Positions 233 through 64,000 are shown, counted from the stretch's first letter. The stretch is DNA of 64,000 nucleotides from Mobula hypostoma (GCF_963921235.1 NC_086108.1:42842001-42906000), one strand, 5' to 3'. Program-made: numbers and translations. The notes: generated from the letters alone by a model not told the origin.

Positions 233-493
233 TCCCTTGTGAGCCACAGAATGTCACAGTACAACTGGATTGTAACCTCAATACAGCTCTGGTTCTGTGG
301 GACGACAGTAAAGGAGCGCTGTGGTACACTGCTGTTGCGGAAGGAGCTGATGGGAACATCGTGTCGTGCAGAACGTCAGAAGCATCATGTAGAACACCCC
401 TGTTACTGTGCGGCCAGATATATTCTGTGTATGTTGTAGCATCTGACAACAATTGTAACCATTCTCTGAGCTCAGTGGTTGAAATTCAAGCAG
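233..493 (+). CDS. Exon A1 (FN3 domain, 261 nt)
   Basis: ttttcAG|TCCCTTGTGAG...GCAG|GTaact; VPCEPQNVTVQLDCNLNTALVLWDDSKG... Confidence 0.92.
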
Positions 494-3400
494 GTAACTA
501 ATTAATGATATGGGATGTACCAGTATGAAACAAGCTTACAGCATGTTTGGTTAGCTTGTCATGCATTTCTGTGCAATCATTTATACTCTTTCATTCAATT
601 TGTAATCTCAATCCCATGCTAGGCATTTTTAATGCTTTATAAGAATTTTTAGAATTTATTGTGGGAGTTTTTTCAATATTATTTTATATTTACCCATTTC
701 TGGAATTTATACAAATTGACTGCCCTTTACTTATTTATTTCTTTGATTCCCCCAGCTCCCTGTAGTCCCCAGAATGTAAGTGCTCACTTGGACTGTACAA
801 CGCACGGAGCGTCAGTTTGGTGGGAGGAGAGCGAGGGGGCAGTGTACTATGCTGCCATGGCAGAAGGAACGGAAGGAGACAAGTACTCGTGCAATACAAC
901 AGAAGCAAACTGTGAGATCGCAGGCCTCCCATGTGGCCAGACGTACAATATATCTGTGTTAGCGATGGACGAGAATTGCACCAGTTTACCAAGTCCAGCT
1001 TTTAATATTGAGACAGGTAAACTTATAATTACCTTTTTATTTAACATAACAAAAGCTACCTTATTTCACTCGTTAAGAAAATGCAGGAATAAATTGAAAT
1101 GTCATCATTAGGGCTCTACATCAAATATATTCACAATAACTATAGTTAGTTATTATTGTAAGCTTCATCATCAATTGTATCAGTTGCTGATCCTTGCTCT
1201 GAAAAACTGATTACGCAGTTATTTTCCTTTCATTCCCAACAATCAATTTGAGAACCTTTTAATGTAAAGATAAAGTGCAATTTCATAATTCTGTTTGTTT
1301 GTAAGATATGGACATATTTATGCAGGAATACATTGACAGTACTTTATTAATTTGATTATAAAACTATGATTATTTTTTCTGCAGTACCATGTATCCCACA
1401 GAATGTGGTAGCTCACATCAACTGCGAGAATAACACTGTCTCAGTGTTTTGGGATCCCAGCAATGGCTCAGAGTCATACCATGTAACAGCACAAGGGACC
1501 AATGGCCACTGGGCCTCCTGCAATACAACAGGCACTGAATGTGAGGTCTCTGATGTGTACTGTGGACTGTATTACTACATAACTGTACAGGCAGTCCGTA
1601 TGCAGTGTAACAGCTCACACAGCTCTGCTGTGGCAGTTAAAACAGGTAATTCTAGTCAAAACTGTATATTAAAATTCTGCAGATATTCTCTTTTGCATCT
1701 AACTGTTATGTGGCTGAATACTTGTGCAACAGTTTCAGGTTAAGTTCTTCTTCTTGCAGTACCGTGTGTCCCCCAGAACGTCAATGCTTACATGGACTGT
1801 GATGCTGGATTTCTGTCAGTCTCCTGGGAGTTCAGTGAAGGTGCATCATCATACATTGCCACTGCAGAAGGAGGTGACGTGCAGCGATGCAGCGCCAACG
1901 ATACGCTGTGTGACATCACTGACCTGTCCTGTGGAGAGACCTATACTGTCACAGTCCTTGCGCACGATGACACCTGTGACTCTGCTGAAAGTCCTTCCAT
2001 CACAATGAGAACAGGTAACTGCTGGGTCGTCCAATTTCTGAATCGCTGATTTCTCCATCAGTCACACTAACTGATTTCTGATCTGGCAAAAACTCTATTT
2101 TCCTGAAAAAGCTCTCCTGTATCTTTTCAAGCAATTACAAAAACCAGTCCCTCAAGTCAGCTGCTGCTGTACATCCGCCACTCATTTGATCTCCTTGTTC
2201 TCTTCTAGTTTGCTGCATCCCACAGAACCTCGATGTCCATGTAGACTGTGACACAAACGATGCTTCAGTACTGTGGAGCCACACTAAAGGTGCAGTCTCT
2301 TACTCGGCAACAGCAGAAGGAAGTGATGGGCACCCAGTTTCCTGTGAGACGGCCAGTACCGAATGTCAGATAACCAACCTATACTGTGGACAGGTGTATA
2401 ATTTAACTGTGACAGCACTGGACGGTGTGTGTGACACCTCACAAAGCTATCATTTTGAATTTAGCACTGGTATGTCTTTCTACTTCTATATTCCTCATAA
2501 TTCTAAACTGTGCAGCCTGTTTGCCACAACAAATTAATTCACTGTGCACCGTACATTCCACAATGTAAAAATATTCCAATGCACTTAATTGGGACTTTAT
2601 TAGCAAATCTATGATTTGTTGTGTCAAATTATTCTAAGTGACACTTAGATACCTAACTTTAAGTTAGATGACATTAACAATCTAACATTTCTGCTATGTC
2701 CTGATAAATCTTTCTTTTCATTGAAAACATAGAAATATTGACAGGTTTTGTGCAGGAAAAGGCCCTTCAGCTAGGAGGTCTATTCCAACCACCATGCCAC
2801 ATTAAATTAACCTTAGCTGTCTGCACATGGGTCATCCGTCTTAACCAATTTCCCCCTGGGATCAATAAAGTATGACTATGACTATGACTATGTTCCCTGC
2901 CTGTGAACATGCTGTTTAAATGTGTCAAAAGACTTAAGTCCAAAAATATTGTATCGATTTTTCTCTTACTTTTGCTTTTCTATATTAATGGTGTTTAAAA
3001 GGGCATGTTTTTCTTTTTGTAAATATATGGTGACTGTTATTTGAGGACTCTGTATTCAAAATTGTTTGTCAAGATTGGCAATATAACCTGGACCACCTCC
3101 AGAAAAAAAGCAGTTGCAGTATCTTACCCAGTCACAATGTGTTTCTGTAATTTGCAGCCCCTTGTACACCCGAACACACTTCCACCAGTCTGGACTGTGA
3201 CACCAGGAGTACGTCAGTGACCTGGGCGAAGGCTGAGGGTGCCATGTGGTACATTACAACAGCAGAAGGACAAGATGGACACGTTTCACTGTGTAACACA
3301 ACAGAGACGAGCTGTGACTTTGTGGACCTGCACTGCAGTCAGACATATTCAATAACTATAACGGCAGTGGACAGTGACTGTCAGAGTGTAAATACCTCTA

Positions 3401-6400
3401 TTTTTGAAACTGAAACAGGTAAAAATCTGAAGGAGTTTATGAGGCATGAGAAATGTTAATCCAGTGCAAGATAGTTCATTTTCTGAGGATTGTGATCCAG
3501 GAGAGCCACATTGGTAATTTTGGTGTTTATGTTATGTTTGCTTTTAGTTCTAATTTAAAAAAAATAAAGTGGATGCACTATTCTCTAGGTTTCCATGCAA
3601 CTTTTAACACCTTATAAAGGTAGTTATAAATTTCTATTTGTAGAGTGAAGATTTTTCCCTCTTGCTGTGGGACTATTTCCCTTGGGTTTTAAAAATAAAA
3701 TTGTAAATTGTAGTCTGAAGATACTGTGTCTTTGAACAGGAAGTTGGTTACTGCATGACTTCCCAGGATATTTTCTACATTTCGCTTTTTTCCTCTGACT
3801 TTGATATTGAAAGAAACATTCAAAGTGCACTTCTATCATTTATTAGTGACCCATTTGTTTTGTTTTCTCCTCCTGTCCTGAAGCCCCTTGTCCCCCTCAG
3901 AACGTACACGCTGATGGTGTTGGTGTCACCGCCTTTGTATCATGGGAGCCGAGTAACCTCACAGTGTGGTATACCGCTACGGCACAGGGGAGCGATGGAC
4001 ACACAGCCACCTGTACCACATCCAAAACAAACTGTCTCATCCCAGATCTTCACTGCAGCCAAACATACAACATCTCTGTCCTCGCATTTGGTGAAACCTG
4101 TAGCAGCTTCCGGAGCTCCCACTACGAAATTCATACAGGTAAATTAGAAAAAAGCCAGTCAGTGATGTAGTGGCATCAGCATCGAACTTGGAGGCCAATG
4201 GTAGCGGTTCGAATCTAGCCAGCCCCTTACACGCTTTCCATCTGTGCTGGGATGAGTGTTGAGGCAGCAACATGACCCCGTAAAAAACAGACAAATGCTA
4301 AGGAAATGGCAAAAAAAATGCCTCCCAATGCGCCACAACAGCCGAAGAAGAACAGCAAGAACAAATTAGAAAAAGAGGATCTGTTTCTATTACATCTTTC
4401 ATCTAAGCGCATTTCATAATTGTATGTCTATTATTTATTAAAAAATTCACTGGCAAGACCAACATTTATCAGTTCCTCCCAGTTTCATTTGGGTAGGTGC
4501 TCTTGAATTCCCTTTTTAAACCATTTTCTTTTCTCTGCTGAAAGCACTCCCACAGTAATATTCAGCAGGGCTTCCAAGATATTAACTCGGCAACGGAAAA
4601 AAAATGTATTTTCATGGTCAGGATGTTGTGCGAATTGAAGAGGAACCGGGAGTTGTTGATACACATTGCAGCCTCAGAGTGAACTTGTGATAGACAAAGT
4701 GAATGTTTATGATGAAGGATGGGATGCCATTCCAATAGATTGCATTGTACGAGATGGCATCAGCCTTGTGAGCTGTTGTTGTTGCCAGGCAGTACAGAGA
4801 GAGCCTTCAGTTCACCACTCATTGTAGATGGTGGTTGCTAGATGTAAAGTGAAAGTGATGTTTGCTATAGTCGGTGAGTCTAGGGCATGATCTCAGAATA
4901 GAAGGATGTCCATTTAGAACAGAGATAGGGAGGAATTTCTTTTGCCAGAGGGTAGGGAACCTGTGGAATTCATTGCCATAAATGGCTTGGTCATTGAGCA
5001 TAATTAAAGCAGAGGTTGATAGGTTGCTGATTAGTCAGGGCATCAAAGGTTACAGGGAGAAGGCAGGAGAATGACATTGAAAGGGATAATAAATCAGCAA
5101 TGTTGGAATGGCAAAGCAAATCATGGGCCAAATGCTGCAATTCTGCTCCTATATCTTATGGTCTATGTGAAGTTTCCAGCTTCCAACTTACTCTTATCGC
5201 CACAACATTCATATGGCTGGTCCTGTTGAGTTTCTGGCCAGTGGTGACTACAGCATTTTGGTGGTTTTCCTTCAGTGAGGGTAATGCCATTGATCATCAA
5301 GGAGAGATGATTAGATTACATCTTTTTAGAGAATATCTCAGCATTACACTTGCGTTTTGCAAATGCTGCTTTCTGTTTATCAGCCTATGACTAGAAATTA
5401 TCCAGGCTTACTGCATGCAGTTGTACACGATTCACTTTTCTGAGAGGTAGAGATGGGATTGAACATGGTGCATTTCCTAGCAAGTATCCCCATTTCTAAC
5501 CCTATGATGGAAGGATGGTCATTGGTGAGGCATCTGAAGATAGTTAAACCTAGAACATTGTCCTGAGGGCCTGAAAAAGGTGTAATGACTTCCAGCAGCC
5601 ACAAACTCCCTTTTCTCAAATATAACTCCGGTCATGAGAGAGCTTCACCTTGATTCCAATTGAATTTAGTTTTAACGGGAATGTTTAAGACCACTTTCAG
5701 AAGCATTTTGCATCATTAAAAAGGCTGGTTTTGAAGTGTAGTAACTGTAGGTAATAAGCCAATGAGTTGCTCACATCAGAGTCCCAAACAACAACACAAT
5801 TTGTGCAACACTTTTAGCATTTACAATTACTGGCTGAGGAGACAGTAATTATTTGCAGTGGACTGGTCCTGCTTTTGTGCACCTGCAAATCAAAGGAATT
5901 TTATGCTTGGATGCAAGAATTTCATTGTTGTCTCTCTCCTAGGCCATATTGGCTATTCGTGCGCTAAGTTCTGAAGCATGTTTTCCACCCTAGAGCTGTG
6001 ATGTTGTCATCCCTTTCCCAGTGCTCGCGGCCTTTATGCAGTGGGAATTCAATTTTGCTGAAGAAGGAAGCTGAGATGGATGGCATCTCTTTTTAATAAT
6101 GGCTGGAAGTTGCTAAACTTTATCTTTCCAGATATACTAGGCTTTGTCAATATGGAGAAAAAGAGGCTCTGTCAATATGGAGAAAAAGAATATTCTTGGT
6201 TTCGGCTCCTCTCCATTTTTTAAAATTGTCCACTACCATTCAGGACTGGATGTGATTGTTCCACAGCTTTGAGCAGGTCATTTGATTGTAAGATCACTTC
6301 AGTCTGCTGCACCATTTATCAGAGACACATGGCTCCAAGTCCACCTTAACTCCTTTCTGATGATTGGCACAACCTACCTGTAATCTTGCACTACTCCGCA

Positions 6401-9400
6401 GTCCACCAGTCATCTTTTTCACCACTGCCCTCTCCTCCTCTTTATACTGGCCATGTCACCTCTCCACTCTCAGTTCTGATGCATCAACAATTCCCTTCTT
6501 CTGGCAGATGCTGCTCACCCCACTGAGTTCCCCAGCAGATTCTCCAGAATCCAGCATCTGTAGACTCTTGTGTCTTCGTGGTCCTGTGTGGTGCTTTCAC
6601 CAGGAAGATAGATTAACATAGGTGCCCCTTGTGGTTTTCATGGCATGTTCTATTCATTGAACCAGGGTTCGTCCTCAGGGAAGTCTATGAGATTACAGAT
6701 CTGGGTTGATACCCATTTCTTAGCTCCTAGAACTGATGTGAATCATTCCTATTTAATACTGTTAAAGAAACGCGGAATATGACAGAGAGCATTATCAATT
6801 GGATATTGGACATTGTCTCCACAAGGACATTGCAGACAAATTTCAGACAGATACAACTGCAAAAGAGAGATTGAGTATGAGATTAACTAGTTTATCACTT
6901 CATGTTAATTGCCTTGACACCTGCCGCAGCCCCATTTGGTTTTGAGTCAGGGCTGTTGTAGATGACTATGTTATGGGCCCTCCCACCCTAAGTGCTTCTT
7001 CCAAACTTCTCAACATAAAAGAGTATGCTGATCCATGAACTAGGAGAGGAAAGTGAGTGGTAATTAGCAAGACACAACCCAACATCATGAGACCTCATGG
7101 ACATTGTGTACCTACTTTGATGGATACACCAGAGTTCTGCTGTATCCAATACATCCAACTGTAGAGTCGGATGTATCCATTAATAGTAAAGGAGAGCTCT
7201 GAAGCAAAGTGCATAAAGTAAAATTTTACTTCACTTAAAACCCAAGATGTTTGTGAGGAGAACTTTCCAGGGTGCTTTGAGCTGGATATACCTTTGTCAT
7301 ATTCAAACCCGGTGCTTCAGTTTATCCAATATTATTCATATGATGTTTTAGCATACCAACTTGACCTAAGAAAATTGCTTGCTGCATGTTTGAAGCCATA
7401 TATAGACCAGACTGCACAAAGACAACTGATTTTCCTACTGGAGAGAGTTAGTGAACCAGACAGATTGTTATCGTATTCTAGATGTTTCATATGACTATTC
7501 TTAATGATAGTTTTTTTTAAATTAATTCCAGATATTTTAATTGATTACTTTTAGTTGCTGAATGCCACAGTAAGACTCAAATTCATGTCTCTTATCATTA
7601 GTATGGAACTTCAGACCTCTCATCTTGTAACAGAACCATGTGTTATATTCACTGTTCATATAGAAAGCACTGAGAGATTAAATATCTGTGGATATGGACC
7701 ATAACCTATCAATGACTCGAGCTAGAACTTGTTCAAATGATTACACAATAACATATGAGTTGGCAACATGTGGAATATAAAGGGGACAGATTCACCAGGA
7801 CTATTTAAGTTCATATAAAACATTAGGAAGGGCTACTTCTTAAGATTTTTCTCACATGAATTTTTTAATTGCAGTATTTCTGTTTCTATAGCACCTTGTG
7901 CTCCAGATGAAATCGTCGCCAATGTGGACTGTAACTCCAACAGAGTGGTAGTTTCATGGGGCCGGACTAATGGAGCAAAAGAGTTCGATGTGACCGCCGA
8001 GGGAAGTGATGGTCATACACACTCACACAACACAACAGAGACACGCCACGAAATGCTGGATTTACACTGTGGACAGTCCTATAACATAACCGTAACAACA
8101 CTGAGTTACAGCCGGCATGGCATTTCGAGTACTTCCATCCAAATACAAACTGGTAAATACAGCTAATCTTTAAATAGCATATAGCAAGGAAATAATTTTA
8201 TATTATTGTGCATATTTTGGGCCAGTAGGAAAAATTATATTCCAAGTAACACTGTTCATTGCTGAGAATCTAACAACTGAGTTAGGTTCTGATTCAAATG
8301 CAGTATCCTCCTGGTCACATGACTGCCAGAGCAATGCTATACACTATGATTTTTCCAGGCATTTAAAGAGTCATGGCTTTAATACAAGTGATACAAGGGC
8401 TCAAATCTAAACCTGCATATACAGTCTCTGTTGTAACAAAAGGTAATATCTTCAGGAGATTCCAGAGTGCATGTATATACAGACATCACTCACTTCTGTA
8501 AAGATGTTTAGAACAGACTGACAGATGAAGTCTTGTATTTCACAATGAGAGGTTAAATGTTTAAGTGTGAACAGCAAACATTTTATGTTATTATTTTATT
8601 ATGCCCATGTTGAAGGTGTCTTTGAAAGTTAATTTGTTGAACTCATAGTTGTGATTCCACAGATGTAATTCCTCTCTATTTTTTCCTGCCTTTGTCCTAA
8701 TGTGTGAACTGTAGGAAAGCATTTTCAAACCCCCTTCATTTAAAATATTCCCGCTGGTACAGACAATGCAGTGTTCTGTGTTGCAAAATAATAACATTTT
8801 CAAAAAGTTGCTTGGTTATCAATTAAACACCCTATTCCCAAAGTTTTGAGGATACCTTTATGGATTCGTGAGAAAAAAGGAAGACCGTTTTAATGAAAAT
8901 GCATTTTAAAAAGCTGTCCCATCCAATGTACTAATGCTTGTATAGGTTGTTTAATTGCTTAAAGTCGGCATGACTCTATGGTTGTATAAAAACAGAAGCA
9001 TAAGAGGTGTGCGAGATGCTGGATGATGGAGTCACCTTGACAGAAAACAGCCTGCATCATTTTATACTTGCCCTGTTGTACCTGTTGAATCTGTAATCGT
9101 TTCGCTCTGCTTTTGTGTTATCTGGCATGAGGAAGCCAGCTCCATTGGGAATTTGTTCATCAATCCCTTTTGACCAGAGACATAAATATTGATTTCAACA
9201 TAATGTCTGCGATGATGAGTTTGAGAAATAAGGAATGAGAATAATTAAAATTATTCAGTCATTGCTAAAATAAGTAAGTAAATATCTATTCACATATTTA
9301 GTGAAGCATCTAATGAATGATGCATTAGAGCCCATAGATCTTAAAGTAAATATTTGGTAAATTCACAACGATAGTTGATCCTTTTGTCTTACATTCTTTT

Positions 9401-12400
9401 TGATTTCCAATCTTATCTTCAGTCCCTTGTGAGCCACAGAATGTCACAGTACAACTGGATTGTAACCTCAATACAGCTCTGGTTCTGTGGGACGACAGTA
9501 AAGGAGCACTGTGGTACACTGCCATTGCAGAAGGAGCTGATGGGAGCATTGTGTCATGTGGATCGTCAGAAGCATCATGTGGAATACCCGTGTTACTCTG
9601 TGGCCAGTTATATTCTGTGTATGTTGTGGCATCCGACAAGACTTGCAACCATTCTCTGAGCTCAGTGGTTGAAATTCAAACAGGTAGTTTATTAACTGAT
9701 GCTTCATTGTCACAGCAAGGTACGCCAACCAGTGTAGATTTTAATGTGTTGACAAAAGACGCTGGAATTATAATGAACTTTGTTAATAGTGTATTTACAA
9801 TTATTATTTTTCCTAGAAATTTAATATCTCATACCTATTTGTGATAAATTACCTTTGGCACTAATCTGCACATCCCCTTGATATCCATGTCTTCTGTCAA
9901 TCCATGTCAGACAACTTCTCTCTTTTCTGCTTTCAGCATATTTTCTAACCACAGAATATCTCTCTACACAGGCAGCAACAGTTAGTCACGTCGTCTCTTC
10001 TCAGTTGCAACAAAGTTTTCATTATTTTGTTGATTAAATCCTCTCAACCACCAATCTACCCATCTTGCTACATTTTCTTTTCAAAATTCACTTAATTTTC
10101 TCCAGCATTCTTTTCTGGGACACCATAATATATCCCTTCGGAAAAGCCACGTGCATTTCATCAAGAAAGTAAGAATTTACATACAGTATATGCAAAATCC
10201 AAGAAAAGACTTACTACTCATCAAGCCTACCTCACAAGCACAAAGGCCAGCACAATTTAGAAGTAACTATGAAGCGCAATAGACTTGACTGTTGTTCGTA
10301 CAACAACAATCTAAACTGGACTTTGTTGAAAGCGATGATTGTTCACAATAATAACCATACGAGATTTGTTAATGTTGCACGTCACATAATTCATTCACCA
10401 AAACCCTCTCACTGGTGAACAGAAGAAAGGCTTACAAACTGAATGCTGTTTTGGATGCATGTACTTCAGCTGAACTGAAGGTCGGACATAGCCTTTATCT
10501 ATCCTGTTTCTCTCATTCCTTCAGCTCCTTGCAGACCTCAAAATGTAAGCACCTATTTGAACTGTGCAACGCACACGGCATCAGTTTGGTGGGAGGAGAG
10601 TGAGGGGGCAGTGTACTATGCTGCCATGGCAGAAGGAATGGAAGGAGACAGATACTTATGCAATACAACGGAAGCAAACTGTGAGATCGCAGGCCTCCCA
10701 TGTGGCCAGACGTATAACGTAACTGTGTTAGCGATGGACGAGAAGTGCACTAGTTTACCAAGTCAACCATCTGAAATTCAAACAGGTAAAATTTTGATTA
10801 TTCTTTTTTTTTTGAAAACCAACAGAACAGGATCACTAACAAATAGGAATAACATGAATTAGCATAGGTTTATATAATGGATAGGTGTTACGCTAGATAT
10901 TTGGTACAAAATTATTTATGAACCTTTTAAACCAGCCAGATGTTAATCCATACTCTGCTTCCTCTTTCTATAGCACCTTGTATCCCACAGAGTGTGGTAG
11001 GTCACATCAACTGCGAGAATAACACTGTCTCAGTGTTTTGGGATCCCAGCAATGGCTCAGAGTCATACCACGTAACAGCACAAGGGACCAATGGCCACTG
11101 GGCCTCCTGCAATACAACAGGCACTGAATGTGAGGTCTCTGATGTGTACTGTGGACTGTATTACTACATAACTGTACAGGCAGTCCGCATGAAGTGTAAC
11201 AGCTCACACAGCTCTGCTCTGGCAGTTAAAACAGGTAATTCTAGTCAAAACTGTATATTAAAATTCTGCAGATATTCTCTTTTGCATCTAACTGTTATGT
11301 GGCTGAATATTTGTGCAACAGTTTCAGGTTAAGTTCTTTCTTCTTGCAGTACCGTGTGTCCCCCAGAACGTCAATGCTTACATGGACTGTGATTCTGGAT
11401 TTCTGTCAGTCTCCTGGGAGTTCAGTGAAGGTGCATCATCATACATTGCCACTGCAGAAGGAGGTGACGTGCAGCGATGCAGCGCCAACGATACGCTGTG
11501 TGACATCACTGACCTGTCCTGTGGAGAGACCTACACTGTCACAGTCCTTGCGCACGATGACACCTGTGACTCTGCTGAAAGTCCTTCCATCACAGTGAGA
11601 ACAGGTAACTGCTGGGTCGTCCAATTTCTGAACACGAACTCTCTATCAATCATATGAACAATGATTTCCGATGTGGCTAAAATATTGTTCTAAAAATACA
11701 CTTGATTGAAGATTTCAGTTGAATAAACAACTTCATCTTCTTTGTAACTCCATGTGTTTGCCAGATCTATACTGCTCTTCACCTGGTCTTCTTGCTTTTT
11801 TTGTAGTTTCCTGCATCCCACAGAACCTCGATGTCCATGTAGACTGTGACACAAACGATGCTTCAGTACTGTGGAGCCACACTAAAGGTGCAGTCTCTTA
11901 CTCGGCAACAGCAGAAGGAAGTGATGGGCACCCAGTTTCTTGCGAGACAGCCAATGAAGAATGTCAGATAACCAACCTACACTGTGGACAGGTGTATAAT
12001 TTAACTGTGACAGCGCTGGATGGTGTGTGTGACACCTCACAAAGCTCTCTGTTTGCATTCAGCACTGGTAGGTGTCTTGAATTAGATATTATCAATATAC
12101 CATGTTTCCAGTGGTAATATTAGCTACTTATTTTCTGTTGTAAAATATCTGAGACCTCTTATTGGGACAAGGAGCATGGATATTTAAAAGTAACTGGGAA
12201 AAGTCACAACTGATAGCCAGGTATAAAATGTAGAATTTCTGAAAAGTAGCAAGGTATGAGGTGTGTAGATAGGATAAATACAAGCAGGCTTTTTCCACTG
12301 AGGTTGAGTGGGACTACAACCAGAGGTCATGGGTTAAGAGTGAAAGGTGAGAAGTCTAAGGGGAACATGAGGGAGAACTTTTTCACTCAGAGGGTCGTGA

Positions 12401-39400: not shown

Positions 39401-42400
39401 TCCCCATCATGCTGTTAACTATATACTATGTTTAGAATCTTTGGCAGACTTGTCTAAGATGTTAATATATAAAATTAATTAATTATTGAATGAAGTCCTA
39501 ACTCTATAGGAGTACGACTACATACTTCTCTACAGTATGATAACCAACAATTTACCACCACCTCTGATTACTATCTGTTAATCATTTGATAACCATGCTG
39601 CCCCTGCCCTTCAGTTCATGGATTCCACTTCTGCTAACAATTGTATCATCTACAATGAATTCAAACATCATGTTCACAAATTTAGAGAGTGAATTTCATC
39701 AACACTGATACTTTAAATTGCGAACCATTTCCATGATTTAGAATAATAAACTCCAATAAAGTTATTACTAACTTAGTAAGTTTGTCAATCAGCTTATTTG
39801 AATCCACAATGCTTGATCCATTGCCTGACATCCATTTTAACTTTCAACCTTATTTTCAGTCCCTTGTGACCCACAGAATGTCAAAGTACAACTGGATTGT
39901 AACCTCAATACAGCTCTTGTATTGTGGGATGATAGTGAAGGAGCACTGTGGTACACTGCCATTGCAGAAGGAGCTGACGGGGGCAACATTTCATGCAGCA
40001 CATCAGAAACATCATGTAGAACACCCATGCTGCTCTGTGGCCAGTTATATTCTGTGTATGTTGTAGCATCTGACAGGACCTGCAACCACTCTCTGAGTTC
40101 AGCAGTTGAAATACAGACAGGTAATCCATTGATTATTGACTATGACATATAATCGAAAAATGCAATTCCATTATTTTAATTCAGTAGTATACTAGAGCAG
40201 TATATTGACATAATATTAAATAAAAATTATCAGTTGTACCAAAGTCTTGTTAGTCAGCCACACAAGATCAAATTGCTGTTTAGATTTTGCATGTTATGTT
40301 ACCATAACCGCTCCAACACCATTTCGTCTAACTTCCAGGTTATACGTGGTGACTTGTTTATAGTCTGATAATAAATTTTACTTTGAACATTTCAACTTTT
40401 TTCTGTAAATGCCTAATTAAACAACCTGAAACAATATCTGTGCTCTAATCCTCCACCTAATGATGTGAATACTATCAAGCATGCCTTAAAATTAATAAAT
40501 CCATGCAGGATTCAATGACTTAATCCCCAAAAATGGTAAATTATCAATTATTTTAGATTCCGATATCTGATATTGATTGAATTCCTCCAGTACTGATCAA
40601 GTTAGCCTCTGGCCGGCTGGTGGCGCAGTGGCATCAGCGCCGGACTCCGGAGTGAAGGCTCCCGAGTTCGAATCCAAGTGGTGCCACCCCCCGAACACGC
40701 TTTCCATCCGTGCCGGGTTGAGCATTGAGTTAGCCACTCGGCCTCGTAAAAAACGAGGGTCAAGTCAGGAACATTCATATCCTGACCCAGTTAATCCGAA
40801 AGGAGACTAATCCTGACACCACGCACCAGACAAGAATGGCTGACTGTCTGGTGTGACAGGTATTATATAGTAGTGAAACCCAGGGAGTTCATCAAGGCAA
40901 CTTCTAGATATGTGACTATCACACAGTAGCCAGATTGAATCATTTAGTTGTTGATGTTTCTACTGTCCCATACAAAGCTTTCCCATGTTCACAGAAAGAA
41001 TTATTAATGTTCTTATTTAGAAGTTTCCATTTTTTAATTTATTGATGTATACATGTTAATTTAAGTAAATGTATGGCTATTCCTTTTTCCATTCTGTTAT
41101 GTTTTAATATTTCTTAAGCTCCCTGTAGTCCCCAGAATGTAAGTGCTCACTTGGACTGTGGAAAATGCACAACATCAGTTTGGTGGGAGGAGAGCGAGGG
41201 TGCAGTGTACTACACTGCTATGGCAGAAGGAGTGGAAGGAGAGGACTACTCCTGCAATACAACGGGAGCAAACTGTGAGATTGTAGGCCTCCCATGTGGC
41301 CAGATGTTTAATATAACTGTGTTAGCGATGGACGAGAATTGCACCAGCTTACCAAGTCCAGCTTTTGAAATTCAAACAGGTAACGATTCTTTCCTTTTCA
41401 ATAAAAATCAACAGAATGAGCATCAGAAACGAATTTCAAAAATTGCATAACATGATAAAACAGGAGATCAATATCCAACACCAAACAGTTAGTAAAATAA
41501 TAATTAACATAGGTAATCATTGCAAAAAACTCAATTGGGTAGCAGATAATCCCGGCAGATAGAGGAGGCCTCTTGCTTGTGCTTTAACTGTGCATTGGGA
41601 ATGCTGTCTTATCTGGTGATCATGTAACATTAATAAGGGTTCAACACTCTCACTTTATAGACCTTGCTTTCTGAATCGTTTCAGAGCTTGCTGAGATTAT
41701 GAAAATATTTAGCATGGCAAGGAGACAAAGATATCTCTTTCATATACAATCCACCTTGGTTAGGTGAAATATAGTGTAGGGAAGTGAATGGGCATGCACT
41801 TAGATAGAAGGAATAAAGGCGTAAACTATTTTCAAAATGGGGAGAAAATTCAGAAATCAGAGGCGCAAAGGGACTTGGGAGTCTTCGTGCAGGATGGCCT
41901 AAAGATTAATTTGCAAGTTGAGCAGGGGTAAAGAAGACAAATGCAATGTTAGTATTCATTTTGAGAAGACTAGAATATAAAAGCAAGGATGCAATACTAA
42001 GGTTTCAAAAGGCATTAGTTAGAACATACTTTGCACAACTTTAGGCCCCTTAGCTATGAATTGACACTGGAGATGGTCCAGAGGAGGTTCACAAGAATGA
42101 TTCTGGGAATGAAAGGGTATGAGGAGTGTTAAATGGCTCTGGACCTGTACTTGCTGGAGTTTAGAAGATAGAGGGGTGGTCTCATTGAAACCTATCGAAT
42201 ATTGAAAGACCTGGATAGAGTGAACATGGGAGGATGTTTCCTATAGTGGGGAAGTCTAAGGCCAGAGGGCAGAGCCTCAGAATAGAAGGATAACTCATTT
42301 GAACTGAGATGGGGGTGGTGAGTCTGTGGAATTCATTGCCACAGATGGCTAGGGAGGACAAACCATTGGGTATATTTGAAGTGGAGGTTGCTATGTTCTG

Positions 42401-45400
42401 TGGTCAGGGCATCAAAGGTTACAGGGAGAAGGCAGGATAATGGGGTTAAGAAAATAATGAATCAGCCATGCTTGAATAGCAGAGTATATTTGATGGGCTG
42501 AGTGGCCTAATTCTGCTCCTATGACTTATGATCATATGGTCCTATGGTAATAGACAGAAACAGATAATATTCAGGCCATGTTAAGTGTGTAGCATTTCCA
42601 TTATCATATAGGAAACACTCTAATATATACTCTCTGTTAAGATTCAGTCTTAAATAATGTTACAAAAAAGATTGTTTGCAGTTTTGCTCATTGTTGTAGT
42701 AATATGATTTGCACAAATTAGCTATGATTTCTATACAAAAATTGTAAGATTTGATATTGTGTAACTTGTAATCATGTTATATTGTTTACAATAGTTTCCT
42801 GTGCATCTTTCTACAGCACCTTGTATCCCACAGAATGTGGTAGCTCACATCAGCTGCGAGAATAACACTGTCTCAGTGTCTTGGGATCCCAGCAATGGCT
42901 CAGAGTCATACCACGTAACAGCACAAGGGACCAATGGCCACTGGGCCTCCTGCAATACAACAGGCACTGAATGTGAGGTCTCTGATGTGTACTGTGGACT
43001 GTATTACTACATAACTGTACAGGCAGTCCGCATGGGGTGTAACAGCTCACACAGCTCTGCTGTGGCAGTTAAAGCAGGTAACATGTGAAGTATTGAAAAT
43101 CATTTCTAAAATTTACATACATTGTTTGCAGTGTTGCCTTTTATGTACCCTTCAGCCTCTATTGATAAATTTTCTTCTTGCAGTACCGTGTGTCCCCCAG
43201 AACGTCAATGCTTACATGGACTGTGATTCTGGACATATGTCAGTCTCCTGGGAATTTTGTGAAGGTGCATCATCATACATTGCCACTGCAGAAGGAGGTG
43301 ACGTGCAGCGATGCAGCGCCAACGATACGCTGTGTGACATCACTGACCTGTCCTGTGGAGAGACCTACACTGTCACAGTCCTTGCGCACGATGACACCTG
43401 TGACTCTGCTGAAAGTCCTTCGGTCACAATGAGAACAGGTAACTGCAGCGAAGAGCAATTTCCTGCATTACTAATTCCTCTCTCCTTCACATTAACTTTG
43501 GTGCCTTCTCTATTAGAACATCCTTCTCTAGAATACATTTATTCTGGAGGACAGTGGTTAGCGCGAAGCTATTATAGCCCCAGGGGTTGAAGTTCTGAGT
43601 TCAATTCCGGTGTCCTCTGTAACTAAGTTTGTACATACTTCCCATGAGTATGTGGGTTTCCTCTGGGAGCGCTGGTTTCCTCCCACAGTCCAACAACATG
43701 CTAGTTAGGTTAACTGGTCATTGTCATTTGTCCTGTTATTAGACTAGGATTAAATATGTGGGTGGCTGGGTGACATGGCTTGTTGGCCCAGAAGGGTTTG
43801 TTCCATGCTCTATCTCTAAATAAACAAACATTTGCCTTAATATTTTGGTTTTAAAAACAATTCCAGAAAATTTAGCAGTTACCATGTAAGTGACACTTTA
43901 TCTGTTGCTTTTGCCATTTCTAGTTTCGTGCATCCCACAGAACCTCGATGTCCATGTAGACTGTGACACAAACGATGCTTCAGTATTGTGGAGCCACACT
44001 AAAGGTGCAGTCTCTTACTTGGCAACTGCAGAAGGAAGTGATGGGCACCCAGTTTCCTGCGAAACGGCCAGTACCGAATGTCAGATAACCAACCTACACT
44101 GTGGACAGGTGTATAATTTAACTGTGACAGCCCTGGATGGTGTGTGTGACACCTCACAAAGCTCTCTGTTTGCATTCAGCACTGGTAGGTGTTTTGATGT
44201 GATTTAGTAAGTTTGATAATTAACTGTACAATTTTTCCTGAAAATTTCACTTACAGTGCACCTTCCATGTATCCAAATATCACACCACATTGAAGTAGAA
44301 AACTGTTAGGTATGCCTACAAAAGAATTATGCTAAATATTAAACGTTTTGATAAGCTGTCAACATCAGGCATGGAATGAACATTAATTGAGAAAACTTGC
44401 CACGGGGAATATAAGGTCCTTTCTATCAGTGGCTTTCAATAATCCATACAGTACAGATGCAGAGAAAAGCTGTAAATGCAACTGTTAGAAGTGTGGTAGC
44501 TGAATGACATATTAAAATGCAAATAGAAGAAAGCTTCAATTATCTAATATTTGACTATTCTGAAATCCAGATGGTTCGGATCTGACACACCAGCTGATAC
44601 TTGACCTACAGCTTACCAGGGCTAACTTTCCATGCTTCCCCTCTGCTGAACCAAGTTTCCGCGCCCCCTTCCAACTCAGCTGGCCCTGGCTGGTTCCTGA
44701 GCTTCCGTTAAACCCACAGGGCCACGACTGCATTTCATCCTTCAAGCTCAGTTCAAGTAGAGACCAGTTTCTATACTTTCTATAAACTGACCAAGGCCCT
44801 GTTTTCTGCATACCCTTTATTACGTTCACTGGAAAAATTATCATGTCACTGTATAATATCCTCCCAAAAATTGAAATGTGTCAGTGTATTAACAGGAATA
44901 TAATCCAATAGTCCAGAAAATCTGCTGGTCTGGTACCACCAAAGTCCTGAGAGTGACACTTTTAATGTAATCAGTACTGAAAGTCCTCCAAAACTTATAA
45001 CATTAGATTGTTTCTAGATATTTTAGTGTTATTTTCAATAAAACCAATGTCCTCCTTGAGTGAAGCTAAGCTCGAAAGTGAATTTTGTGTTCTGAATTTT
45101 CTGTTTCCCCAGTAATTATTGCTTCCATTAGTTAAGTATTATAGGGGGCTCTTTGTTGATAACAAGTACAAAAATAAATCCACTATTCTCGCAAGCTCAA
45201 AAACAATTTTACTGACTACTTATATTGACAGAAGTGGATTTTAGCCATTCCCACCACGTCACAGTTACTTTGTGTTTCTGTAATATGCAGCCCCTTGTGC
45301 ACCCGAACACACTTCCACCAGTCTGGACTGTGACACCAGGAGTACGTCAGTGACCTGGGCGAAGGCTGAGGGTGCCATGTGGTACATTACAACAGCAGAA

Positions 45401-48400
45401 GGACAAGATGGACACGTTTCACTGTGTAACACAACAGAGACGAGCTGTGACTTTGTGGACCTGCACTGCAGTCAGACATATTCAATAACTATAACGGCAG
45501 TGGACAGTGACTGTCAGAGTGTAAATACATCCATTTTTGAAACTGAAACAGGTAAAAATTCCTAGAGGCTTAAGATGTTTGAAAATCATTTCATTGTCAC
45601 AGCAAAAAGGTTGTTCTCCAGACTGCAGTCCAGTCAGGTCACACTGTTAGTTTAAGAATTTGTAAAGACTCTTGTTTTCCTCTGAGTGGTGATAGAATTC
45701 AGCATTGTCAGTAGGTTTCTGCATGTCTTCTAGCATTAACCCTTTACATTAGAAGGTTTAATTTCTTCCATTTTCAGATAAGTGAGCCAAAGCCTTGTGA
45801 CAAAATAACTTGTTAGAAAATTAAGACCCTGATGCACTGTATGTATTTGAATGAGAATATACTGTAATTACGTCATCACTGTGCATCTGTACAGTAAAAG
45901 TTTATTTTCTGTTGTGTATATTAATGGAAACAATTGAAACTCTGTACTACTATAATTAAATATTGATTCTTTTCTCTCTCCTCCTGTCCTGAAGCCCCTT
46001 GTCCCCCTCAGAACATACAAGCTGATTGTGCTGGTGTCACTGCCTTTGTATCATGGGAGCCGAGTAACCTCACATTGTGGTACACCGCTACGGCAGAGGG
46101 GAGTGATGGACACACAGCCACCTGTACCACATCCAAAACAAACTGTCTCATCCCAGATCTTCACTGCAGCCAAATATATAACGTCTCTGTACTCGCATTT
46201 GGTGAAACCTGCAGCAGCCTGCAAAGCTCCCACCATGAAATTCAGACAGGTAATATAGAAAGAGAGAACCTCTCTTCAACACATGAGGCCTTTTCATCTC
46301 CTCAAGACTGTTCACACTCAACAAAGTGGGTCCAGTCATCTTCAGACTAGCCTCCGATTATATATTTAATTGTTAATACAGGTCCACAATCCCTTATACG
46401 AAATTCTTGGGGCCAGTTGCATTTCGGAATTCAGAATTTTTCGGATTTCAGACCCCCCCCCCACCGATACCAACAAACACGTATTTAACCTGTCTCAGCG
46501 CGGAGGACTGTAAGACNNNNNNNNNNNNNNNNNNNNNNNNNNNNNNNNNNNNNNNNNNNNNNNNNNNNNNNNNNNNNNNNNNNNNNNNNNNNNNNNNNNN
46601 NNNNNNNNNNNNNNNNNNNNNNNNNNNNNNNNNNNNNNNNNNNNNNNNNNNNNNNNCCAACAAAAACATTCAATAAAACATAAAAATATACAGCTTCAAA
46701 CGAACCGAATCAAACAAATGGTAAATGACTTATTGGAATAAATGTAGAACATCACTGTCAGTGTCGCTATAAAACTTCAGTAACTTGTCTTTCTGTTTAT
46801 TTAAATCATGTGCAGTGGTAATTCCGACACTATTTTCTTCAGTAAGACGCCGCACAGACACACCACGATCAAGCTTCGGCAATAACTCCACTTTCTGTGT
46901 TATTGATAGAGAAGATTCCTTCTATTTTTCTCATTGTTACCCATAGGAGTATCTGCAGCTCTTTTTGACATTTTCACAGTGAAATTAAACGCAAAGTCAA
47001 CAGTGAACACAAAACGTCAGCAAACAGCAAATGTACGTGTAACCAGTATGAGCGCTGAGCCACAACTGATGCCTGGCGGCCTCTGCTAGTGCTGCCACAT
47101 CACACCTGAGTGACGTCAGCTGTTGGCGAAAAAAACTTCGGTTTTCAGAGCTTTTTGGATTTCAGAATTTCGAATAAAGGAATGTGCACCTGTAACCTAA
47201 TTGCTTTTACTATCTCTGATTGAAATTCAAATTATAGGCTGTCATAAGGTTACCTGGGGTAAGAGTCTGTTTGCAGTGCACAACCTGCTCATCCTCATGG
47301 ATTGCCTCTCAGTATAGAGAACCAGCTTGGCCTTCAGATCAAATTAGTGTCGGTAAACAACAGGTCATTGGGACAGTGGTTCTCTTAATTTCTCTCAGGA
47401 TACCAGATCAGGTTTTATAACTGAAATGATTGATAATACTTGTTAATGACCGCAAAATCCATCTATCGATATTCAGTGAAAGCAGACAGGTCTGTTGGTC
47501 AGGCTTGCTCTTGACTTGTTTAACCAATGCGTAAATTGAGATTTCAATCTATAGAATATAAAGGTGACTTTGTCAGAGCAACCTAAGTTCTGTAAAATGT
47601 TGGCAACAACCATCTCTCCATCCTCTGGCACGAGCCTGATGAATTTTAATGTTTACATATTATTTTCTATAGCACCTTGTGCTCCAGATGAAATTGTCGC
47701 CAATGTGGACTGTAACTTCAACAGAGTGGTAGTTTCATGGGGCCGGACTAATGGAGCAAAAGAGTTCGATGTGACCGCTGAGGGAAGTGATGGTCATATA
47801 CGCTCACACAACACAACAGAGACACGCCAGGAAATGCTGGATTTACACTGTGGACAGTCCTATAACATAACCGTAACGACACTGAGTTACAGCCGGCATG
47901 GCATTTCGAGTACTTCCATCCAAATACAAACTGGTAATACTATCCACTTAGTAGTATGCACAACGGAAATGGTCAGATTTATTAATTATGATACAGTCCA
48001 GGCCAGAAGAATTGATACAATTTTTTTTTATTTTTGAATAGCACCTTGCATTCCAGAGAACCTAGCAGCTGAGCTAACCTGCAGTTCAAATACAGTGTCC
48101 ATCACGTGGAATGACACTGAAGGAGCCAAGTTATATACTGTCGCCGCTCGAGACAGACAAAAAGTAATCGCCTTATTCAACACAAGTAGTACAAGGGCTC
48201 AGCTCCCACATTTGCAGTGTGGTGAATATTTCACGATCTCTGTTCTAGCAACAGATGACATCTGCAGCAGTCCTCAGAGTGCAGTGGTGAATGTACTTAC
48301 AGGTATCGCTCAATTCCATTTGTCGTTTGTTTGGTCCTTCTGTTTGACTACAGTTCGTAGTGCAGATTAGATTAAAGATCACGGCTATACTTCCTTTAAT

Positions 48401-63562: not shown

Positions 63563-64000
63563 TACGAGCCTGACTGAATTTTTTGAGGATGTGACTAAAC
63601 ACATTGATGAAGGTAGAGCAGTAGATGTAGTGTATATCGATTTCATCAAGGCATTTGACAAGGTACTCCATGCAAGGTTCATTGAGAAAGTAAGGAGGCA
63701 TGGGATCCAGGGGAACATTGCTTTGTGGATCCAGAACTGGCTTGCCCACAAAAGGCAAAGAGTAGTTATAGATGGGTCATATTCTGCATGGAGGTCAGTC
63801 ACCCGTGGTGTGCCTCAGGGATCTGTTCTGGGACCTCTACTCTTCGTGATTTTTATAAATGACCTGGAGGAAGAAGTGGAGGAATGGAAATTAAATTTGC
63901 TGACGACACAAAGGTTGGAGGTGTTGTGGATAGTGTGGAGGGCTGTCAGAAGTTACAATGGGACATTGATAGGATGCAAACCTGGGCTGAGAAGTGGCAG
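63563..64000 (+). mobile_element. CR1 RT fragment (runs off the window end)
   Basis: Highly similar to 55250-55680 ([24 protein letters not shown]). Confidence 0.88.

What the first reader, a model, noticed from the sequence alone, without database searches (positions are those of the whole stretch)
233..47933. Patchwork ancestry: which units are sisters changes exon by exon and within exons
Seen: the C-D intron and the flank after D pair units 1+2 (GTAATTCTAGTC...; GTAACTGCTGGG) against 3+4 (GTAACATGTGAAG; GTAACTGCAGCG). E 3' ends pair 2+4 (SSLFAFST|GTAGGTGT) against 1+3 (FEF..|GTATGTCT). F 5' ends pair 1+4 (PEHTSTS) against 2+3 (PDNIS). G 3' ends pair 1+3 (FRSSHYEIH) against 2+4 (LQSSHHEI), yet the G1 acceptor flank matches G4 (CTCCTCCTGTCCTGAAG). 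H 5' halves pair 1+4 (GRTNGAKEF) against 2+3 (GRTGGATSF), and the H-I intron is shared by 2+3. No single duplication tree explains all three possible pairings. Inference: repeated short conversion events shuffle variants between domains and could generate allelic diversity in the protein.
Basis: partly seen in the sequence, partly recalled or inferred. Interest (0 to 1): 0.82.

Follow-up and report, generated by a model that had tools for sequence, protein, structure and literature searches.

The report
Exon-limited gene conversion in FN3 super-repeat
A giant FNDC7-like gene carries a nine-exon block repeated five times, and short copy-and-paste events (gene conversion) confined to single exons have scrambled which blocks look like sisters; this is a clear example of a known process, not a new one.

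Summary
The + strand carries one giant FNDC7-like gene with at least 64 FN3 domains, one per phase 1-1 exon. Its nine-exon unit A-I is repeated five times, not four; unit 0 lies just upstream of the window.

Sister relations differ by exon:
- Informative sites for units 1-4 (12|34, 13|24, 14|23): A 17/2/0, G 1/7/1, H 0/1/24; permutation p=5e-5.
- The same holds for the quartet that leaves out unit 4.
- The five-taxon topologies that AU tests accept for exon A and for exon H do not overlap.
- PHI on concatenated exons gives p=1e-4.

For one pair of units, dS runs from 0 to 0.7 depending on the exon. Similarity stops within about 30 nt of exon ends. The 106-121 nt C-D intron keeps JC about 0.6 between {1,2} and {3,4}, while the exons beside it have dS about 0.05.

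Best explanation: non-allelic gene conversion limited to exon-sized islands of homology (confidence 0.85).

Switches inside exons have moderate support (15 of 80 max-chi2 tests p<0.05; FDR about 5-8%). The idea that this generates allelic diversity is untested, and dN/dS is below 1. The N run lies in intron G4-H4 and does not affect the result.

Known mechanism, new example. The scan also noted the super-repeat (s1-142709).

The parts
233..493 (+). exon A1 (FN3 domain, unit 1)
   Evidence: AG/GT, phase 1-1, 261 nt. Closest to A2, 91.6%.
756..1016 (+). exon B1
   Evidence: Closest to B3, 92.0%.
1385..1645 (+). exon C1
   Evidence: 96-98% identical to all other C copies.
1646..1759 (+). C1-D1 intron (114 nt), haplotype shared with unit 2
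   Evidence: 1 mismatch in 114 nt against unit 2; JC about 0.6 against units 3 and 4.
1760..2014 (+). exon D1
   Evidence: 255 nt. 96-99% identical to all other D copies.
2209..2469 (+). exon E1
3158..3418 (+). exon F1, near-copy of F4
   Evidence: 98.9% to F4, dS 0.036. The BLAST match 3129-3426 ends 29 nt before and 8 nt after the exon.
3884..4138 (+). exon G1
   Evidence: The 3' part pairs with G3: max-chi2 breakpoint near exon position 141, p=0.004. The acceptor flank is shared with G4 and G0.
7892..8152 (+). exon H1, near-copy of H4
   Evidence: 97.3% to H4, about 88% to H2 and H3. The match 7883-8160 barely passes the exon ends.
8236..8500 (+). dead exon I1 (pseudoexon)
   Evidence: Acceptor AG lost and in-frame stops present. 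76% to I2.
9423..9683 (+). exon A2
10525..10785 (+). exon B2
10974..11234 (+). exon C2
11350..11604 (+). exon D2
   Evidence: 99.2% to D3, 98.8% to D1.
11807..12067 (+). exon E2
   Evidence: The 3' part pairs with E4: breakpoint near exon position 174, p=0.002.
13939..14199 (+). exon F2
   Evidence: The first ~28 nt are F3-like and the rest is F1/F4-like, p=0.001.
17105..17359 (+). exon G2
   Evidence: 93.7% to G4. RNA contigs cover it.
18682..18942 (+). exon H2, near-copy of H3
   Evidence: 98.1% to H3. The block 18653-19303 matches 34722-35373.
19040..19300 (+). exon I2, identical to I0 (unit 0, upstream of the window)
   Evidence: 261 of 261 nt identical to I0. The same-sample unitig 19026-19303 has depth 31 against a baseline of about 11.
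21413..21673 (+). exon A3
   Evidence: An RNA contig joins an I exon to an A exon here.
22616..22876 (+). exon B3
26735..26995 (+). exon C3
27102..27356 (+). exon D3
29166..29426 (+). exon E3
30416..30676 (+). exon F3
33446..33700 (+). exon G3
34751..35011 (+). exon H3
35110..35370 (+). exon I3
   Evidence: 98.9% to I0 and I2. The three differences are at exon positions 26, 128 and 166.
39860..40120 (+). exon A4
41119..41379 (+). exon B4
42817..43077 (+). exon C4
43184..43438 (+). exon D4
43924..44184 (+). exon E4
45291..45551 (+). exon F4
45995..46249 (+). exon G4
46517..46656 (.). N run (assembly gap or masked stretch) inside intron G4-H4
   Evidence: Both flanks are intronic, and no tandem repeat lies beside it.
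47673..47933 (+). exon H4
48042..48302 (+). exon I4, the unhomogenised I copy
   Evidence: 79% to I0, I2 and I3; dS about 0.6.

Best explanation
The + strand encodes one giant FNDC7-like protein built from Cys-rich FN3 domains, one domain per 255-261 nt phase 1-1 exon. An ancient nine-exon block (A-I) was amplified to five tandem units, 0-4, spanning about 70 kb. Exon A and the C-D intron suggest the underlying duplication order was ((0,(1,2)),(3,4)). The introns have since diverged beyond alignment.

Since then, non-allelic (intragenic) gene conversion has repeatedly copied sequence between exons at the same position in different units, across distances of up to about 42 kb. Only the exons, plus the two short introns C-D and H-I, still offer enough homology. 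Tracts are therefore confined to islands of about 280-720 nt that end within a few to about 30 nt of exon borders, and some end inside exons.

Each exon therefore has its own genealogy. C and D are homogenised across all five units. F and H pair 1 with 4. H and I pair 2 with 3. I0 is identical to I2. B pairs 1 with 3. G pairs 1 with 3 and 2 with 4. Exon A is little affected.

Shown: the incongruence, the spread of dS between exons, the island boundaries, and expression of the exons. Inferred: the molecular mechanism (homology-dependent repair with rejection of mismatched heteroduplex in diverged introns) and the direction of each event.
For: 1. Gene and array. 64 intact FN3 exons (67 profile matches in all, all on +) lie between -56 kb and +63 kb. 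Pfam fn3 matches them. The named relatives are FNDC7-like or fndc7rs1 proteins of 4-5 thousand residues. Exactly five C-D blocks exist in the genome, all at this locus.
2. Incongruence. Quartet site counts are A 17/2/0, B 1/5/2, F 0/0/5, G 1/7/1, H 0/1/24. All five quartets give permutation p <= 1.5e-4. The AU-accepted topology sets of A and H are disjoint. PHI on concatenated exons gives p=1e-4.
3. Different ages for one pair of units. Units 1 and 4: dS is A 0.51, B 0.24, F 0.036, H 0.053. Units 0 and 2: B 0.49, I 0.000. Synonymous sites carry the conflicting splits.
4. Exons are younger than their introns. The C-D intron has JC 0.58-0.64 between {1,2} and {3,4}, while C and D have dS 0.00-0.09 between those groups (about 0.05 typical). 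The H-I intron between units 2 and 3 has JC 0.19, while H has dS 0.052 and I 0.035. The H-I intron between units 0 and 2 has JC 0.49, while I0 equals I2. BLAST matches end within 30 nt of exon ends.
5. The nested pattern H1~H4 (97.3%) and H2~H3 (98.1%), with 88% between the pairs, cannot arise from clock-like tandem duplication.
6. Edge effect. Variable sites are enriched within 30 nt of exon ends in the homogenised exons: C, D, E 39% against 23% expected, p=0.003; F, G, H 38%, p=3.5e-5. There is no enrichment in A and B (25%). Tracts that need homology on both sides would give this.
7. GC3 rises with homogeneity (rho about 0.72, n=9, computed). This fits GC-biased conversion as reported for non-allelic conversion (10.1101/135152).
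8. Assembly and expression. Same-sample contigs match the assembly with 0 differences across the exon-intron junctions of G2, H2, I2, A3 and B3. RNA-like contigs cover only exons, plus one high-copy repeat, and one of them joins H-I-A.
9. Turnover since a sister species split. That species differs by about 1.5-2% in introns. It shows only the I3-type letters at 19167 and 19205, at about 2x depth, and not the I0/I2 type.
10. Cross-species protein comparison. C, D and E copies are 92-100% alike within this genome but 71-82% to shark orthologues.
Against: - Single within-exon breakpoints are only marginally significant (BH q 0.05-0.08).
- The GC3 trend rests on nine points.
- The sister-species evidence comes from simplified contigs that drop minority variants, and the paralogue of origin cannot be assigned.
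- No raw reads or second individual were available, so no conversion was seen as a polymorphism.
- The exact match of homogenisation limits to exon borders at all four C and D borders is tighter than a simple random-tract model predicts. It needs the added assumption that diverged introns block heteroduplex.
- The state of unit 4 across the N run is unknown.
Confidence: 0.85

Rival explanations
1. Duplication history alone. The five units arose by staggered unequal crossovers or partial block duplications with different breakpoints, so different exons have different sisters without any conversion.
For: Unequal crossover must have created the array. Sister relations do change by region. The C-D block with its intron is shared by 1+2 (1 mismatch in 114 nt) and by 3+4 (JC 0.07). 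The H-I block with its intron is shared by 2+3. These could be leftovers of block duplications.
Against: - Duplication copies introns too. Yet F1/F4 (98.9%), H1/H4 (97.3%) and I0/I2 (100%) sit in introns with no detectable similarity beyond 30 nt.
- Short introns are 4-10 times more diverged than the exons on both sides of them.
- The close pairs are not neighbours and are nested (1-4 around 2-3; 0-2 skipping 1), with distances that violate any clock-like tandem history.
- Breakpoints inside exons exceed expectation.
Confidence: 0.06
2. Assembly or polishing artefact. Paralogous exons were mixed by collapsed repeats, chimeric joins or short-read polishing, which created false mosaics.
For: - An N run lies inside unit 4.
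- Exon interiors share 31-mers between paralogues, so contigs break there.
- At 17245, 17249, 18860 and 18891 the same-sample contigs show the paralogue-consensus letter instead of the letter unique to G2 or H2.
Against: - Each exon sits in unique intron sequence. Same-sample contigs reproduce the exon-intron junctions with 0 differences.
- Depth of the I2 unitig (31 against about 11) fits two to three real copies.
- A different species gives orthologous contigs that carry the same unit-specific letters (for example T at 17185) and differ by 1.5-2% overall.
- Protein models of two sharks show the same exon-by-exon spread of paralogue identity (Heptranchias G 68%, H 83%, I 98%, C 97%).
- The significance holds without unit 4.
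Confidence: 0.03
3. Homoplasy. Parallel or convergent substitutions, through selection on the same residues or CpG hypermutability, mimic conflicting sister groups.
For: The domains share one fold and a Cys framework, and CpG is depleted (observed/expected 0.15-0.57).
Against: Conflicting splits are carried by many synonymous sites. They are clustered by exon (PHI p=1e-4; chi2 permutation p=5e-5). Flanking intron bases share the same groupings.
Confidence: 0.02
4. RNA- or cDNA-templated homogenisation. Spliced transcripts of the same gene serve as repair templates, which would explain why homogenisation stops at exon borders while 100-nt introns stay diverged.
For: The cross-group identity of C and D ends 4-13 nt from all four exon borders, although the intron between them has JC about 0.6.
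Against: - Several tracts include intron sequence: the C-D intron in 1+2 and in 3+4, the H-I intron in 2+3, and the 29 nt upstream of F1/F4.
- No intron has been lost.
- Variable sites pile up at exon ends. DNA tracts that need flanking homology predict this. cDNA templates, in which neighbouring exons supply the flanking homology, do not.
Confidence: 0.04

Closest known systems
Non-allelic (interlocus) gene conversion between tandem duplicates, as measured in human duplicate genes (Harpak et al., bioRxiv 10.1101/135152)
   Same: Tracts are short (their mean is about 250 bp; here about 280-720 nt). Conversion is GC-biased and slows as the copies diverge. The result is mosaic genealogies along the sequence.
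   Different: Here donor and acceptor are exons of one gene, at the same position in a nine-exon super-repeat. The homology is cut into equal islands of about 261 nt by introns that no longer align. Distances reach about 42 kb.
[quoted passage not shown]
   Same: Domain repeat units stay similar through recombination, detected with PHI. The authors describe it as rare and lineage-specific.
   Different: Here homogenisation is not between neighbouring domains. It acts only between the same domain type across five higher-order units, and to very different degrees per exon: 80-92% identity for A and B, 96-99% for C and D.
Multi-exon block amplifications in giant modular proteins, such as the nebulin triplicated region, titin Ig super-repeats and LPA kringle IV-2 (from my own knowledge, not checked here)
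   Same: A block of several domain exons is amplified in tandem inside one gene and keeps frame and order.
   Different: In those cases the introns are co-amplified and remain alignable or near-identical. Here the introns are unalignable and only the exons are kept similar.
FNDC7, fndc7a and fndc7rs genes of vertebrates
   Same: The Cys-rich FN3 domain type is the same. NCBI names the relatives 'FNDC7-like' or 'fndc7rs1'. Zebrafish fndc7a and fndc7rs4 mark lateral-line support cells (PMC6363392).
   Different: Annotated FNDC7-like models in sharks and rays have 6-19 domains. This gene has at least 64. The function is unknown. Other lineages have their own super-repeat periods of 3 and 5 domains.

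Membership tests
FNDC7-like Cys-rich FN3 repeat proteins | Domains are fibronectin type III | tested here: met
   PF00041 is the best hit for all 7 domains tested. E is 2e-6 to 3e-5 for four of them, and three of those reach the 25-bit cut-off.
FNDC7-like Cys-rich FN3 repeat proteins | Conserved Cys framework (PC.P ... C ... W ... C ... C ... CG..Y ... C) | tested here: met
   Alignment A1 has C2, P4, C13, W22, C59 and Y63 invariant and C74 nearly so. Types H and I lack the middle Cys pair.
FNDC7-like Cys-rich FN3 repeat proteins | Closest named relatives are FNDC7 or fndc7rs | tested here: met
   The profile search found 346 proteins at E<=1e-30. The names of the top hits are FNDC7 protein, fndc7rs1, and FNDC7-like in Heptranchias, Cetorhinus and Narcine. 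Domains are 70-91% identical and in the same A-I order.
Concerted evolution by non-allelic gene conversion | Genealogy changes along the sequence beyond chance | tested here: met
   chi2 permutation p=5e-5; AU-accepted sets are disjoint; PHI p=1e-4.
Concerted evolution by non-allelic gene conversion | Short tracts of high identity set in older, diverged flanks | tested here: met
   Matches end within 30 nt of exon ends. Introns have JC 0.19-0.6 beside exons with dS 0-0.05.
Concerted evolution by non-allelic gene conversion | Paralogues within a species are more alike than orthologues between species | tested here: inconclusive
   Met at protein level for C, D and E against sharks and a ray (92-100% against 71-82%), but independent amplification could give the same result. 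For exon I against the sister species, the contig evidence suggests turnover. DNA of other species could not be fetched.
Concerted evolution by non-allelic gene conversion | GC-biased outcome | tested here: inconclusive
   GC3 is 0.50-0.51 in C, D and G, against 0.39-0.43 in A, I and H. rho is about 0.72 with n=9.
Concerted evolution by non-allelic gene conversion | Conversion events segregating as polymorphisms | not testable with these tools
   Only Logan contigs were available. They drop minority variants.
Higher-order (multi-exon) tandem repeat within a gene | The same ordered set of exon types is repeated, keeping the frame, in one transcript | tested here: met
   A-I is repeated five times in the same order, all phase 1-1. 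An RNA-like contig joins H, I and the next A.

The most novel reading that the evidence does not exclude
Homogenisation that stops at exon borders might not just reflect loss of intron homology. For example, C and D differ by at most 4% across all five units, while the 106-121 nt intron between them keeps JC about 0.6. Spliced RNA or cDNA of this very long transcript could be acting as a repair template, or there could be selection for exon-wise shuffling that yields mosaic, polymorphic adhesion-type domains. Either way, the locus is a natural array of 44 equal-sized homology islands in which the length and identity thresholds of vertebrate gene conversion could be measured directly.
Probability: 0.06. 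Interest if true: 0.8.

Novelty: new member of a known kind. Interest (0 to 1): 0.4.

Why it matters
This is an unusually clean natural example of gene conversion restricted to exon-sized homology islands. There are 44 exons of nearly equal length, in five units, showing every degree of homogenisation from 79% to 100% identity, next to introns that record the original age.

It matters in three ways:
- Domain or exon trees of giant repeat proteins cannot be read as duplication histories.
- The locus gives a place to measure how tract length, homology length and sequence identity limit non-allelic conversion in a cartilaginous-fish genome.
- The uncharacterised giant FNDC7-like genes build lineage-specific super-repeats of 9 domains here and of 3 and 5 domains elsewhere.

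It does not reveal a new mechanism.

Tried and rejected
- PHI inside single exons was mostly not significant: A 0.67, C 0.72, F 0.20, G 0.14. I therefore do not claim within-exon recombination for those exons.
- A global-alignment identity measure for intron flanks was too noisy; unrelated 200-mers scored 8-56%. I rely on the BLAST match limits and on the aligned short introns instead.
- The look-up of encoding contigs for the Heterodontus orthologue returned no DNA. Cross-species comparison is therefore at protein level only.
- The RNA contig that joins H-I-A cannot be assigned to one unit. Its H part and its A part each differ by 4 letters from H2 and A3, and no unit fits exactly. It shows I-to-A splicing but not which units.
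- 'Other letters' in the same-sample contigs at 17245, 17249, 18860 and 18891 looked like assembly errors. They sit exactly where G2 or H2 is unique and the other four paralogues agree. I read them as cross-laid paralogue contigs or bubble-popping.
- Literature searches on FNDC7 gave expression markers but no function.
- Diversifying selection is not indicated. dN/dS is below 1 in almost all pairs. Only exon C is near 1, and on very few changes.
- I did not try to read or fill the N run.

Full report
WHAT IS THERE

The window is G000:C50:42842001-42906000, from a 3.48 Gb genome. Its + strand carries a long series of exons. Each encodes one Cys-rich fibronectin type III domain; Pfam PF00041 is the best hit for every domain tested. 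All the exons have AG acceptors and GT donors, are phase 1-1, and measure 261 nt, or 255 nt for types D and G.

A profile built from twelve of these domains (alignment A1) found 64 intact domain exons (67 profile matches in all), all on the + strand, between window coordinates -56 kb and +63 kb. The same profile found giant relatives of 4-5 thousand residues in lungfish, newt, gar, a cyprinid and others. NCBI calls these FNDC7 protein, fndc7rs1 or 'uncharacterized'. Shark and ray gene models named FNDC7-like carry the same domain types in the same order, at 70-91% identity.

Nine domain types, A to I, form a unit. A fifth, unit 0, lies just upstream of the window, from A0 at -21176 to I0 ending at -1770. 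The genome holds exactly five C-D blocks, all at this locus. Exon I of unit 1 is dead: its acceptor is lost and it has in-frame stops.

CHECK OF THE OBSERVATION

Pairwise identities per exon confirm that the partners change:
- A: 1-2 closest, 91.6%.
- B: 1-3, 92.0%.
- C and D: all five copies 96-99%.
- F: 1-4, 98.9%.
- G: 1-3 and 2-4, both 93.7%.
- H: 1-4 at 97.3% and 2-3 at 98.1%, with about 88% between the two pairs.
- I: I0 and I2 identical over 261 nt, I3 98.9%, I4 79%.

Parsimony-informative sites for units 1-4, in the order 12|34, 13|24, 14|23, are A 17/2/0, B 1/5/2, F 0/0/5, G 1/7/1 and H 0/1/24. This gives chi2 91.6 and permutation p = 5e-5. All five possible quartets of units are heterogeneous, including units 0-3, which avoids unit 4 and its N run.

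AU tests over the 15 five-taxon topologies show that the set accepted by exon A and the set accepted by exon H do not overlap. PHI on the concatenated exons gives p = 1e-4. The conflicting splits are carried by synonymous sites as well: 7 in A for 12|34 and 16 in H for 14|23. Convergent selection is therefore not the cause.

WITHIN EXONS

This part is weaker. PHI inside single exons is marginal: B 0.037, E 0.049, H 0.066. Max-chi2 on all 80 copy pairs gives 15 tests with p<0.05 where 4 are expected, and 8 with p<0.01.
- The first ~28 nt of F2 are F3-like (p=0.001).
- E2 and E4 share the 3' third of the exon (p=0.002).
- G1 and G3 share the 3' half (p=0.004).

BH q values are 0.05-0.08. I treat within-exon switching as likely but not proven case by case.

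WHY CONVERSION AND NOT DUPLICATION HISTORY

1. For one and the same pair of units, dS ranges from 0 to 0.7 depending on the exon. Units 1 and 4: A 0.51, F 0.036, H 0.053. Units 0 and 2: B 0.49, I 0.000.
2. Similarity ends within 30 nt of exon ends, except across the short C-D and H-I introns. Near-identical exons such as F1/F4, H1/H4 and I0/I2 therefore sit in introns that no longer align. A duplication would have copied the introns too.
3. Where a short intron can be aligned, it is much older than the exons on both sides.
   - C-D intron: JC 0.58-0.64 between {1,2} and {3,4}, against dS 0.00-0.09 (about 0.05 typical) in C and D between those groups.
   - H-I intron, units 2 and 3: JC 0.19, against dS 0.052 in H and 0.035 in I.
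   - H-I intron, units 0 and 2: JC 0.49, although I0 equals I2.
4. The close pairs are not neighbours and are nested (1-4 around 2-3; 0-2 skipping 1). Clock-like tandem duplication cannot produce those distances.

Exon A and the C-D intron are the least homogenised parts. They suggest an original history of ((0,(1,2)),(3,4)).

MECHANISTIC DETAIL

Inferred tracts are about 280 nt (single exons) to about 650-720 nt (the H-I block in 2+3; the C-D block in 1+2 and in 3+4). This is in the range reported for non-allelic conversion, whose mean is 250 bp, which is GC-biased and which slows as the copies diverge (10.1101/135152).

Variable sites are enriched within 30 nt of exon ends in the homogenised exons: C, D, E 39% against 23% expected, p=0.003; F, G, H 38%, p=3.5e-5. 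There is no enrichment in A and B, at 25%. This fits DNA tracts that need homology on both sides. It argues against a spliced-RNA template. So do the tracts that include intron bases.

GC3 is highest in the most homogenised exons (rho about 0.72, n=9). This is suggestive only.

READS

One read-laying run on 17000-22999 used contigs only.
- Same-sample DNA contigs match the assembly with 0 differences across the exon-intron junctions of G2, H2, I2, A3 and B3.
- The I2 unitig 19026-19303 has depth 31 against a baseline of about 11. This fits I0 = I2 plus the k-mers that I3 shares with them.
- RNA-like contigs of two species cover the exons, plus one high-copy repeat, and not the introns. One contig joins H, I and the next A, so the units are spliced into one transcript.
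- A sister species with 1.5-2% intron divergence shows only the I3-type letters at 19167 and 19205, at about double depth. In this genome I0 and I2 share three letters that I3 lacks; at position 26 I4 agrees with I3, which makes the I0/I2 letter derived there. This points to turnover since the split. Contigs drop minority variants, so it is not proof.
- The 'other letters' at 17245, 17249, 18860 and 18891 lie where G2 or H2 is unique among the paralogues. I read them as cross-laid paralogue contigs.

THE N RUN

The N run at 46517-46656 lies in intron G4-H4, 267 nt after the G4 donor and 1016 nt before the H4 acceptor. No frame crosses it. The G-to-H exon order matches the other units, and the intron length falls in the range of units 2 and 3. 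Whether the two sides are continuous is unknown, and I did not try to fill it. The main result stands without unit 4.

CONTEXT IN OTHER SPECIES (PROTEIN LEVEL ONLY; NO DNA COULD BE FETCHED)

- The Narcine ray models read up13-A-B and E-F-G-H-I-dn01-dn04. This is consistent with a single unit.
- Heterodontus has at least two units (D-I, then A-I).
- The Heptranchias models also imply two.
- C, D and E copies here are 92-100% alike but 71-82% to the sharks. For A, B, F and I the deepest within-genome splits are as deep as the between-species distances.
- Paralogue identity is just as uneven in the sharks: Heptranchias C 97%, G 68%, H 83%, I 98%; Heterodontus D 99%, G 90%. The process is probably family-wide.
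- Giant relatives in other lineages have their own super-repeat periods of 3 and 5 domains.

COMPARISON WITH WHAT IS KNOWN

Concerted evolution of domain repeats detected with PHI is described as rare and lineage-specific (PMC5100051). Mosaic divergence of tandem paralogues through interlocus conversion is well established. This locus is a new and very clean member of that kind. The gene family has no known function. Zebrafish fndc7a and fndc7rs4 mark lateral-line support cells (PMC6363392).

dN/dS is mostly 0.1-0.5, and the visible net effect is homogenisation.

VERDICT

The mechanism is known. Interest is moderate at 0.4. Earlier notes of this scan on the same stretch, the giant FNDC7-like super-repeat (s1-142709) and the dead exon I1 (s1-143243), agree with what I found.

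Noticed in passing
L004-L006 (window coordinates -21176 to -1770; G000:C50:42820825-42840231): A fifth copy of the nine-exon unit (unit 0) lies just upstream of the window. All nine of its exons are intact; F0 is one codon shorter. Its exon I is 100% identical to I2, 21 kb away.
   Followed up: yes
window 8236-8500: Exon I of unit 1 is dead. AAATAG|CA has become AAGTAA|CA, so the acceptor is lost, and there are in-frame stops and a frameshift. It is 76% identical to I2. Unit 1 therefore contributes eight domains. Skipping in RNA could not be checked.
   Followed up: partly
window 37104-38030: A 57-nt minisatellite of about 16 copies, 90-97% alike, lies in the intron between I3 and A4.
   Followed up: no
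window ~17900-18210 (related copy 56876-56964): A very high-copy interspersed repeat lies in intron G2-H2. Contig depth there is about 350,000, against about 11 for single-copy DNA. It is also present in RNA-like runs.
   Followed up: no
window 18684-18941 and 19042-19299 (domain types H and I, all units): Types H and I have lost the middle Cys pair of the domain: C45 and C52 of the alignment are H/H in type H and F/A in type I. Type H also lacks C74. These two domain types therefore have fewer disulfides.
   Followed up: no
window 49648-63268, and L001-L004 upstream: The gene continues on both sides. Sixteen more single-copy FN3 exons lie upstream (-56368 to -24269). Four lie downstream (49648, 51588, 52210, 58676), followed by two divergent FN3 exons (59166, 63068). 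The total is at least 64 domains. Neither the 5' nor the 3' end was found.
   Followed up: partly
proteins P0004, P0005 (other species): Giant FNDC7-like proteins of other lineages have their own higher-order repeats. Pseudorasbora fndc7rs1 has a period of 3 domains (76% identity at lag 3), and another protein has a period of 5. Newt and gar show none.
   Followed up: partly
proteins P0035, P0038, P0155 (Heptranchias, Heterodontus): Shark orthologues have at least two A-I units, and paralogue identity is uneven between neighbouring exons (Heptranchias G 68%, H 83%, I 98%). This suggests the same patchwork in sharks.
   Followed up: partly
window 24308-24554 vs 59473-59719; 55311-55677 vs 63635-64000: Two pairs of dispersed direct repeats, 88-94% identical, lie in introns. 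They are probably copies of transposable elements.
   Followed up: no
window 17127-17304 (exon G2): Between this species and its sister species, exon G2 differs at about 5 of 255 sites (2.0%). This is as much as the flanking introns (1.5-1.9%). At two of the sites the sister species has the paralogue-consensus letter.
   Followed up: no
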